A stretch of DNA of 63,997 nt, the filler included, from Octopus bimaculoides (Eukaryota): the NCBI RefSeq assembly GCF_001194135.2. It is 6 parts of 6 records of this genome, joined end to end, with 100 filler letters (N's around TTAATTAATTAA, not from the genome) between each part and the next. Parts side by side here need not be neighbours in the genome. Positions count along the whole stretch, not along the records: positions 1 to 25,637 come from NC_068988.1; 5 more parts are not named here. The stretch is one strand, 5' to 3'. This document shows positions 18,102 to 18,493 of the stretch, in pieces. The position numbers and the translations under genes were made by a program. The notes below the pieces were generated by a model, which did no database searches, was not told the DNA's origin, and saw nothing but the letters and a program-made list of their open reading frames with translations. Position 1 is the stretch's first letter. Each line of letters begins with the position of its first letter.

Positions 18102-18409
18102 TCACAAGGATGTAAGGGCCACATTTTTGCGGTCCGTTATTCGTACTGAAAAATCAAGATCGAGCGAGTATTTTGCCCTTTCTGCTCGACTTGTGGTTTC
18201 CGTCCACGCTGAGCTCGCTTTCGGACACCTGGGTTTACAGTTTGACAGACATACCGCCCCCAGATAAACACCCCGACCGACACTCTTCACGCATCAGCTG
18301 CGCCCTCACCCGTCAAGGCGCTGAACATGCACCGCGTACTTCCCACCAATTGATGAACCACAGTTCGGCGACTGCCTGATCCCATCTCCATCGAATGACC
18401 GAGAAAACT
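18102..18409 (-). pseudogene. Diverged 28S (LSU) rRNA fragment, domain V including the P-loop region
   Basis: The minus strand reads ...ctgggggcggtatgtctgtcaaactgtaaacccaggtgtccgaaagcgagctcagcgtggacggaaacc...gagcagaaagggcaaaatactcgctcgatcttgatttttcagtacgaata..., colinear with conserved eukaryotic 28S (ctggggcggtacacctgtcaaacggtaacgcaggtgtcctaaggcgagctcag...gagcagaagggcaaaagctcgcttgatcttgattttcagtacgaata). The match is clear over 18102-18288; 18289-18409 is tentatively expansion-segment sequence. Confidence 0.85.
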
Positions 18410-18493
18410 TTCCAAGTTGCCGCGTAGTGGATCTGAACCCGAAACCGCTTGGTTGCAAAGCGAAGCTTCTTAACTCCACTGCATCACCTGCAT
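18410..18493 (-). mobile_element. tRNA-derived SINE head (family A) joined to the 28S fragment
   Basis: gcaggtgatgcagtggagttaagaagcttcgc...gggttcagatccactacgcggcaacttggaaa matches the heads at 14007 and 30281, including A/B-box-like motifs. Confidence 0.75.

What the first reader, a model, noticed from the sequence alone, without database searches (positions are those of the whole stretch)
18102..18493. tRNA-SINE head fused to a 28S rRNA fragment
Seen: on the minus strand a family-A SINE head (18493 to 18410) stops after cttggaaa and runs directly into sequence that becomes a clear 28S rRNA match (18288 to 18102), including the ctggggcgg P-loop region. It carries small indels and ends near a (ca)n tract. 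Known: 28S-derived SINE parts exist (mammalian SINE28, and some SINEs with 28S-derived bodies), and LINE machinery can make chimeric retrocopies by template switching. Inference: either a one-off SINE/rRNA template-switch chimera, or a member of a tRNA-head/28S-body SINE family that I do not know to be described in cephalopods.
Basis: partly seen in the sequence, partly recalled or inferred. Interest (0 to 1): 0.75.

Follow-up and report, generated by a model that had tools for sequence, protein, structure and literature searches.

The report
28S rRNA piece inside octopus SINE
One old copy of a common octopus SINE has about 26 bases of its middle replaced by a decayed 310-base piece of 28S ribosomal RNA, most likely a one-off copying accident rather than a new SINE family.

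Summary
On the minus strand a tRNA-like SINE head (18493-18402) runs straight into a 28S rRNA fragment.

Three points change the picture:
- **The "filler" is 28S.** A profile built from 15 real eukaryotic 28S genes matches 18417-18101 as one continuous hit (123 bits, E 1e-39). It runs from the conserved strand 5' of expansion segment ES31, through ES31 and the P-loop hairpin, to ...GATCCTTTTGA.
- **The SINE resumes after the 28S piece.** Consensus 119-151 lies at 18109-18053 (0 of 1700 genomic windows and 0 of 1000 shuffles score as high). The SINE's microsatellite and 3' half follow at 17805-17515. The 28S piece therefore replaces SINE consensus 93-118 inside one full SINE copy. The (CA)n tract lies within the resumed SINE body.
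- **Both joints lie in SINE/28S look-alike patches.**

Best reading: a one-off mosaic made when a LINE reverse transcriptase switched templates twice (SINE RNA, then 28S rRNA, then SINE RNA). DNA-level templated repair is a serious rival.

T4 and T5 runs inside the insert argue against one. This is a new member of a known kind (chimeric retrocopies), of modest interest.

The parts
18402..18493 (-). Family-A SINE head and start of body (consensus about 4-92). A-box-like motif at 18486-18476, B-box-like motif at 18439-18429.
   Evidence: nhmmer with a profile of the window's other copies: E 6e-13. blastn to the consensus. Pairwise alignments reach 18402. Motif coordinates.
18402..18417 (-). 5' joint zone ACTTGGAAAGTTTTCT. 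It aligns both to the SINE (CCTTGGGCAAGTGTCT) and to 28S (ACTTTCATCGTTTCTT), so the crossover cannot be placed more exactly.
   Evidence: The SINE alignment ends at 18402 and the 28S profile alignment starts at 18417. Side-by-side alignments.
18101..18417 (-). Contiguous, decayed 28S rRNA fragment of about 310 nt, sense-oriented relative to the SINE. It covers the conserved strand 5' of ES31, ES31 itself (about 18408-18291), the P-loop hairpin (CTGGGGGCGG at 18263-18254) and downstream helices up to ...CATCCTTGTGA.
   Evidence: nhmmer with 15 real 28S genes: one hit, 123 bits, E 1e-39. Rfam LSU 80.5 bits. blastn to 21 28S loci. ES31 part against L004: score 17 versus 9.0 +/- 1.4 for shuffles, 0 of 300. 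No 28S similarity beyond 18100.
18053..18109 (-). The SINE body resumes (consensus 119-151): CCTTGTG, then AGTGAATATGGTA, then CCGAAAGCTGAA. It carries an 8-nt insert (18101-18094) and a (CA)n expansion (18080-18065). CCTTGTGA (18109-18102) is also the end of the 28S match, so this is the 3' joint zone.
   Evidence: Local alignment score 17. 0 of 1700 other 65-nt windows of this sequence reach it (maximum 15.3), and 0 of 1000 shuffles (maximum 12.6). Blocks also found.
17886..18052 (-). AT-rich insert of 167 nt and unknown origin inside the SINE. It is flanked by a duplicated stretch of SINE consensus 141-151: CGAAAGCTGAA at 18063-18053 and CGAAAGCGAAA at 17885-17875. This looks like a target-site duplication from a later, separate insertion.
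   Evidence: Sequence. Motif coordinates. No SINE-A or 28S similarity above shuffles. No other copy in the window.
17862..17885 (-). SINE body, consensus about 141-170 (CGAAAGCGAAACCGGTCGATATAT).
   Evidence: Local alignment to the consensus, reached by 3 of 300 shuffles. It lies in order between the body and the microsatellite.
17734..17805 (-). Internal (TA)n(TG)n microsatellite of the SINE (consensus about 164-211). It is preceded by 56 nt of AT-rich sequence (17861-17806) that is not explained.
17515..17733 (-). 3' half and tail of the same SINE family (consensus about 212-395).
   Evidence: blastn to the consensus: 17743-17525, 77% identity over 222 nt, E 1.6e-43. 76% identity, E 1e-45 in the joined version.

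Best explanation
**What it is.** About 26 nt of the SINE body (consensus 93-118) are replaced by a contiguous, sense-oriented, roughly 310-nt piece of 28S rRNA. The piece runs from the strand 5' of ES31, through ES31 and the P-loop, to ...GATCCTTTTGA.

**The joints.** Both joints sit in short patches where the SINE and 28S happen to look alike:
- 5' joint: SINE GTGTCTTCTACTAT against 28S GTTTCTTTACTTAT.
- 3' joint: SINE CCTTGTGA against 28S CCTTTTGA.

**Most likely mechanism (inferred).** During target-primed reverse transcription of a SINE RNA, the LINE reverse transcriptase copied the SINE 3' part. At the CCTTGTGA patch it jumped to abundant 28S rRNA and copied about 310 nt. At the second look-alike patch it jumped back to a SINE RNA and finished the head. 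One mosaic cDNA was inserted.

**Afterwards.** The copy decayed (about 12% substitutions at invariant 28S positions) and picked up a (CA)n expansion and a 167-nt insertion. It has no function and is probably a single copy.

**Shown versus inferred.** The anatomy and the look-alike joints are shown. The RNA-level mechanism and the single-copy status are inferred.
For: - **Continuous 28S hit:** 18417-18101, E 1e-39; Rfam 80.5 bits. The ES31 part is significant against a real 28S.
- **SINE head:** E 6e-13, reaching 18402.
- **SINE body resumes at 18109-18053:** 0 of 1700 windows and 0 of 1000 shuffles score as high.
- **SINE 3' half on the same strand:** E 1.6e-43.
- **Non-random joints:** in some references the two 28S joint sites rank among the top 4 of about 4000 positions of a 28S gene for similarity to the SINE joint segments (for example L002: rank 1 and rank 4).
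- **Same orientation of all parts**.
- **Precedent:** in mammals, sense-oriented 28S fragments (median 269 nt) joined to LINE-1 in single insertion events are attributed to template switching or RNA ligation (PMC13174262). Template switching is also proposed for SINE heads (PMC5729268).
- **Compatible ages:** pairwise identity of the head to other copies is 75-86%, against 87.5% for 28S at invariant positions.
Against: - **No proof of a single event.** Target-site duplications around the whole copy are not readable in this old, AT-rich sequence.
- **A DNA-level event would leave the same structure.**
- **Leaving and re-entering the same kind of template is an unusual tripartite outcome.**
- **Copy number was not measured.**
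- **The 3' joint is not fixed.** It could lie up to about 25 nt further 3', because 18101-18081 aligns weakly to 28S as well.
- It was validated only by its matches to copies in the window (72-92% identity).
Confidence: 0.45

Rival explanations
1. Post-integration DNA-level event. A normal SINE copy suffered a break or replication stall in its body. It was repaired by microhomology-guided templated synthesis or gene conversion, using rDNA (or an rRNA-derived cDNA) as the template. This replaced 26 nt with about 310 nt.
For: It explains the same anatomy: a replacement with loss of 26 nt and look-alike patches at both joints. The SINE parts on both sides fit one copy, being of similar identity to the consensus (79% and 77%).
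Against: Templated insertions of several hundred bases from another locus are rarer than reverse-transcriptase template switches in a genome with many active LINEs. In O. vulgaris, LINEs make up 12.9% and SINEs 11.6% of the genome, with thousands of recent insertions (PMC13282606). Nothing in the sequence points specifically to DNA rather than RNA as the donor.
Confidence: 0.25
2. Member of an amplified SINE subfamily: family-A SINEs that carry a 28S module in the body.
For: The composite keeps what a SINE needs: the Pol III head and the normal 3' half and tail of family A. Octopus genomes hold hundreds of unclassified SINE families (893 listed in PMC13282606). A 2024 review lists only SINE28 as a 28S-derived SINE (PMC10946416), so such a subfamily could have gone unnoticed.
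Against: No second copy of the 28S piece or of either joint occurs in the 20.5 kb of non-N sequence. The insert puts T4 (18407-18404) and T5 (18153-18149) runs between the promoter and the tail, and native 28S itself has TTTT at two places in this stretch. Pol III would tend to stop before the tail that the LINE needs (inference). Six-frame ORF searches across the joint found nothing, but their power was low.
Confidence: 0.15
3. Ancestral form. The family-A body segment (consensus about 84-127) is itself a collapsed remnant of this 28S fragment, and this copy is a relic of the undeleted progenitor.
For: The look-alike patches are longer than typical microhomology: 12 of 15 columns at the 5' joint, and 14 of 20 for SINE GGCCGACCAAAGCCTTGTGA against 28S GGCCTATCGATCCTTTTGA at the 3' joint. 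These counts are by eye, on sequences.
Against: A spliced alignment of SINE consensus 80-132 to real 28S sequences does not exceed shuffles. Equally good matches of the joint segments occur elsewhere in 28S. The 28S piece is no more decayed than ordinary copies, whereas a progenitor relic should be among the oldest.
Confidence: 0.05
4. Independent neighbours: a truncated SINE head, an rRNA pseudogene and a 5'-truncated SINE that happen to lie side by side.
For: SINE-A density is high, at about 7 copies in 20 kb, so neighbours are common.
Against: There is no spacer at either joint. All three pieces share one strand and lie in SINE order. The SINE coordinates nearly abut (92 and 119). Normal LINE-mediated insertion does not make 3'-truncated SINE heads (established knowledge of target-primed reverse transcription).
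Confidence: 0.05

Closest known systems
[quoted passage not shown]
   Same: A sense-oriented internal fragment of 28S rRNA a few hundred bases long (median 269 nt there, about 310 nt here) is joined directly to a retroelement sequence in what looks like one insertion. Template switching or RNA ligation during target-primed reverse transcription is the proposed cause.
   Different: The partner here is a tRNA-derived SINE, not LINE-1. The 28S piece lies inside the partner (SINE-28S-SINE), not at its 5' end. A different region of 28S is involved (P-loop region, against nt 3636-4115 of human 28S). The host is a cephalopod, whose LINEs are not L1-dominated.
Chimeric retrogenes made by template switching (U6-L1 and related bi- and tripartite chimeras; Buzdin et al., cited in PMC4758252 and PMC5729268)
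   Same: Cellular RNAs are joined head to tail in the same orientation without a spacer. This is explained by the reverse transcriptase jumping between templates.
   Different: In the classical cases the 5' partner is a complete small RNA. Here the reverse transcriptase would have left and re-entered the same kind of template at look-alike patches, giving an internal substitution. Target-site duplications could not be read here.
SINE28 (Longo et al. 2015, PMC4994717)
   Same: A dispersed, 28S-derived retro-sequence.
   Different: SINE28 comes from the 3' end of 28S, has no tRNA head, is reported as Pol III-transcribed from the 28S-derived sequence, and is a low-copy family (27 human loci). The piece here is internal 28S, embedded in a tRNA-type SINE, with no evidence of more than one copy.
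Octopus tRNA-derived SINEs (Ohshima and Okada 1994, as cited in PMC4758252; SINEs make up 11.6% of the O. vulgaris genome, PMC13282606)
   Same: The head, body segment, internal microsatellite and 3' half all match the family seen in at least six other copies in the window.
   Different: This copy lacks consensus 93-118 and has 28S sequence in its place.

Membership tests
Octopus family-A tRNA-derived SINE | Head with Pol III A-box and B-box motifs, homologous to other copies | tested here: met
   nhmmer E 6e-13 against a profile of the window's copies. Boxes at 18486-18476 and 18439-18429. No tRNA is called by ARAGORN or Rfam, so tRNA ancestry rests on the literature.
Octopus family-A tRNA-derived SINE | Family-specific body, internal (TA)n(TG)n tract and 3' half in the same order and on the same strand | tested here: met
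   Consensus 119-151 at 18109-18053. Consensus 164-392 at 17795-17525, E 1.6e-43. Consensus 93-118 is absent.
28S rRNA-derived sequence | Significant, collinear match to eukaryotic LSU rRNA in sequence and structure | tested here: met
   Rfam RF02543: 80.5 bits against a gathering score of 50. nhmmer 123 bits over 317 nt.
Functional rRNA gene | Invariant core positions intact, and a full-length gene in an rDNA unit | tested here: not met
   11 of 88 invariant positions are changed, with several indels. Only about 310 nt are present, flanked by SINE sequence.
SINE28 | [quoted passage not shown] | tested here: not met
   The Rfam-aligned part of the fragment maps to model positions 2621-2802 of 3401, and the rest lies 5' of that. 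The 3' end of 28S is absent.
SINE28 | Several dispersed copies, Pol III transcripts | not testable with these tools
No octopus genome collection is searchable by DNA.
Template-switch chimeric retrocopy | Parts from different RNAs in the same orientation, joined without a spacer | tested here: met
   The SINE and 28S alignments overlap by 16 nt at the 5' joint and by 8 nt at the 3' joint.
Template-switch chimeric retrocopy | One pair of target-site duplications around the whole chimera | tested here: inconclusive
   AATATAA occurs at both ends (18500-18494 side and about 17523-17517). Similar AT-rich words also sit in the tails of other copies.
   No second copy in the window. ORF-based searches found nothing but had little power. 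The protein library holds only annotated Octopus proteins. JGI metagenomes hold no SINE-A.
   The family-A body and 3' half follow the 28S piece. The 28S piece is an internal insert, not the body or tail.

The most novel reading that the evidence does not exclude
This copy represents a real lineage of octopus SINEs that carry a 28S rRNA module. It would be either an amplified subfamily or the undeleted progenitor of the family-A body. In that case part of the body of one of the most abundant octopus repeats would trace back to 28S rRNA, and this would be the first tRNA-head SINE with a 28S-derived middle.
Probability: 0.15. Interest if true: 0.65.

Novelty: new member of a known kind. Interest (0 to 1): 0.3.

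Why it matters
If it is a one-off, it is a clean invertebrate example of a mosaic retrocopy. A SINE is interrupted by ribosomal RNA, and both joints lie at look-alike patches. That adds a cephalopod case to a phenomenon catalogued mainly in mammals, and it shows one way SINE bodies can acquire foreign modules.

It becomes important only if other copies share the joints. It would then document how a new SINE body is born from rRNA.

For annotation, the practical lesson is that the rRNA hit and the (CA)n tract belong to a single SINE copy and are neither a gene nor a separate element.

Tried and rejected
1. **Sequencing runs.** There was therefore no read depth, no copy count, no transcripts and no read laying.
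2. **Six-frame ORF searches** of the joint, the 28S part and the head-plus-joint against 5.8 billion proteins gave no hit, even at E <= 1. A control ORF from neighbouring SINEs found 60 cluster representatives; the six looked up were annotated O. bimaculoides or O. vulgaris proteins or unnamed archive entries. These negatives therefore have little power.
3. **Exact look-ups of four window ORFs** in public assemblies found nothing.
4. **A scan of JGI metagenomes** for the SINE B-box region found nothing.
5. **Whether 18065-17866 holds the missing SINE body (consensus 82-163).** Chain alignments did not exceed shuffles, and nhmmer found nothing there. I first favoured an insertion with a duplication at consensus about 84-93. 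I dropped that once the body was found at 18109-18053.
6. **28S continuing past 18100.** Not supported.
7. **The family-A body as collapsed 28S.** Not supported statistically.
8. **An upstream second SINE head at 18551-18537.** Not significant.
9. **Links to rDNA-specific LINEs (R2, R4, RT sites).** Considered but not followed, because the fragment ends coincide with SINE look-alike patches instead.

Full report
**Setting.** The piece is 25,637 bases with nine assembly gaps. It is AT-rich and crowded with SINEs. An ORF that runs through two neighbouring SINEs has 60 relatives among protein cluster representatives. Six were looked up: five are annotated proteins of Octopus bimaculoides or O. 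vulgaris, and one carries only an archive identifier with no species name. The window is therefore from an Octopus genome. All coordinates below are window coordinates, and the element lies on the minus strand.

- Rfam's eukaryotic LSU rRNA model hits 18267-18075 with 80.5 bits (gathering score 50, E 1.3e-17), at model positions 2621-2802 of 3401. In a narrower search the robust part is 18265-18119.
- CTGGGGGCGG (18263-18254) sits in the hairpin loop that the Rfam structure line shows. From established knowledge this is helix 80, the P-loop.
- 77 of 88 highly conserved model positions are kept, and there are several one-base insertions. The fragment is a dead pseudogene.
- The head is a genuine member of the window's commonest SINE family. 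A profile built from the other copies hits 18476-18408 (E 6e-13), and pairwise alignments carry the similarity to 18402.
- A-box-like and B-box-like motifs lie at 18486-18476 and 18439-18429.
- ARAGORN and Rfam call no tRNA there. The tRNA origin rests on the literature for octopus SINEs (Ohshima and Okada 1994, as cited in PMC4758252).

**The stretch between head and clear 28S.** It is GC-rich (57-61%, against about 30% around it). I fetched 21 real eukaryotic 28S loci from environmental contigs using a conserved P-loop pattern.
- blastn of the element against them carries homology up to 18305-18326 in several references, and to 18417 in one (L004).
- The stretch 18412-18296 alone aligns over its full length to L004's conserved strand (CGTTTCTTCACTCACTCGGTGA) plus ES31. 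The score is 17, against 9.0 +/- 1.4 for dinucleotide shuffles, and 0 of 300 shuffles reach it.
- A profile of 15 distinct 28S sequences gives one unbroken nhmmer alignment, 18417-18101, at 123 bits and E 1e-39.

The piece is therefore about 310 contiguous bases of 28S. It runs from the conserved strand just 5' of ES31, through ES31 and the P-loop, to ...CATCCTTGTGA (28S GATCCTTTTGA). Beyond 18100 there is no 28S similarity above shuffles. The names of the expansion segment and helices are from my own knowledge.

**What follows the 28S piece.**
- A consensus of the SINE family finds the family's 3' half on the same strand at 17743-17525 (77% identity over 222 nt, E 1.6e-43) and its internal microsatellite at 17805-17734.
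- Directly after the 28S piece, 18109-18053 reads CCTTGTG[8 nt]AGTGAATATGGTA[(CA)n]CCGAAAGCTGAA. This matches SINE consensus 119-151 (CCTTGTGAGTGGATTTGGTAGACGGAAACTGAA). The alignment score of 17 is reached by none of 1700 other 65-nt windows of this sequence (maximum 15.3) and none of 1000 shuffles (maximum 12.6).
- A 167-nt AT-rich stretch (18052-17886) then separates two copies of SINE consensus 141-151: CGAAAGCTGAA at 18063-18053 and CGAAAGCGAAA at 17885-17875. This looks like a later insertion with its target-site duplication. The SINE then continues (CCGGTCGATATAT).

The whole of 18493 to about 17515 is therefore one SINE copy. The 28S piece replaces consensus 93-118 (26 nt), and the (CA)n tract is an expansion inside the resumed SINE body, not a tail.

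**The joints.**
- **5' joint.** The SINE alignment ends at 18402 and the 28S alignment begins at 18417. The shared 16 bases, ACTTGGAAAGTTTTCT, resemble both SINE CCTTGGGCAAGTGTCT and 28S ACTTTCATCGTTTCTT.
- **3' joint.** CCTTGTGA (18109-18102) is SINE CCTTGTGA and 28S CCTTTTGA.
- **Position is not random.** I slid the SINE joint segments along about 4 kb of real 28S genes. In some references the two joint sites rank among the best four positions; in L002 they rank first and fourth. The joints lie where the two sequences look alike.

**How it most likely arose.** The parts share one orientation, there is no spacer, and there are look-alike patches at both joints. A 3'-truncated head is not something ordinary target-primed reverse transcription makes. 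These features fit a mosaic cDNA.
- In this reading, the LINE reverse transcriptase started on a SINE RNA, jumped to 28S rRNA at the CCTTGTGA patch and copied about 310 nt. It then jumped back to a SINE RNA at the second patch and finished the head.
- There is precedent. Mammalian genomes hold sense-oriented 28S fragments (median 269 nt) fused to LINE-1 in single events (PMC13174262). Template switching has also been proposed for swaps of SINE heads (PMC5729268).
- The ages are compatible: 12.5% change at invariant 28S positions, against 14-25% pairwise difference between this head and other copies.
- This mechanism is inferred, not shown.

**The main rival.** A later DNA-level event (microhomology-guided templated repair or gene conversion from rDNA) would give the same structure. 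Only an orthologous locus can separate the two.

**One-off or family?** I could not count copies.
- No octopus DNA collection is searchable, and the JGI metagenomes contain no copy of the SINE.
- ORF-based searches across the joint were negative but weak (calibrated).
- Nothing else in the window resembles the 28S piece.
- Against a family: the insert puts a T4 run (18407-18404) and a T5 run (18153-18149) between the Pol III promoter and the 3' tail. Native 28S already has TTTT twice in this stretch. Transcripts would tend to end before the tail that the partner LINE must recognise.
- For a family: the composite keeps both head and tail, and octopus genomes hold hundreds of unclassified SINE families (PMC13282606).
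- I put a family at about 0.15.

**Is the ordinary family-A body itself a collapsed remnant of this 28S fragment?** I also asked this. The look-alike patches are rather long: by eye, 12 of 15 and 14 of 20 columns. However, a spliced alignment of the SINE consensus to real 28S does not exceed shuffles, and equally good matches occur elsewhere in 28S. This reading is unsupported but not excluded.

**Comparison with known things.**
- It is not SINE28, which derives from the 3' end of 28S and has no tRNA head (PMC4994717).
- A 2024 review of rDNA-transposon links lists SINE28 as the only 28S-derived SINE (PMC10946416).
- The closest known kind is the template-switch chimeric retrocopy. The unusual points here are the host (a cephalopod), the partner (a tRNA-type SINE) and the internal SINE-28S-SINE arrangement.

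**Verdict.** It is a new member of a known kind and of modest interest, unless the joints turn out to be shared by other copies.

Noticed in passing
window 17886-18052 (minus-strand reading), flanked by 18053-18063 and 17875-17885: A 167-nt AT-rich insert of unknown origin inside the same SINE copy. It is bracketed by a duplicated 11-nt stretch of SINE sequence (CGAAAGCTGAA / CGAAAGCGAAA), like a target-site duplication. No similar sequence occurs elsewhere in the window.
   Followed up: partly
window 19039-19789 (+): Nested SINEs. A family-A copy (19039-19146 and 19621-19789) is split by a different tRNA-like SINE of about 400 nt at about 19196-19600. A 166-aa ORF on the opposite strand (19392-19892) runs through both and has relatives among annotated Octopus proteins.
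   Followed up: partly
window, many sites (for example 3612-3694, 7761-7833, 21845-21915): About 45 Rfam hits to mir-297, mir-466, mir-3149 and similar families. All are far below their gathering scores and all sit on (TA)n/(TG)n microsatellites, so they are false positives.
   Followed up: no
window 17806-17861 (minus-strand reading): 56 nt of AT-rich sequence lie between the SINE body (consensus about 170) and its microsatellite. The SINE consensus has no counterpart. It may be a decayed microsatellite expansion.
   Followed up: no
window 702-1603, 4964-5598, 9251-9566, 10395-11216, 12519-13035, 13683-13840, 21152-21793, 22642-23100, 24117-24807: Nine runs of N (158-902 nt), mostly next to microsatellites inside SINE copies. 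These are assembly gaps of a short-read draft, so nearby repeat structures are incomplete.
   Followed up: no
L004, L011, L016 (environmental 28S loci): These three loci share an ES31 that resembles the element's ES31 part more than the other references do. Their conserved core nevertheless differs from the element. The taxon is unknown, and they are not the source.
   Followed up: no
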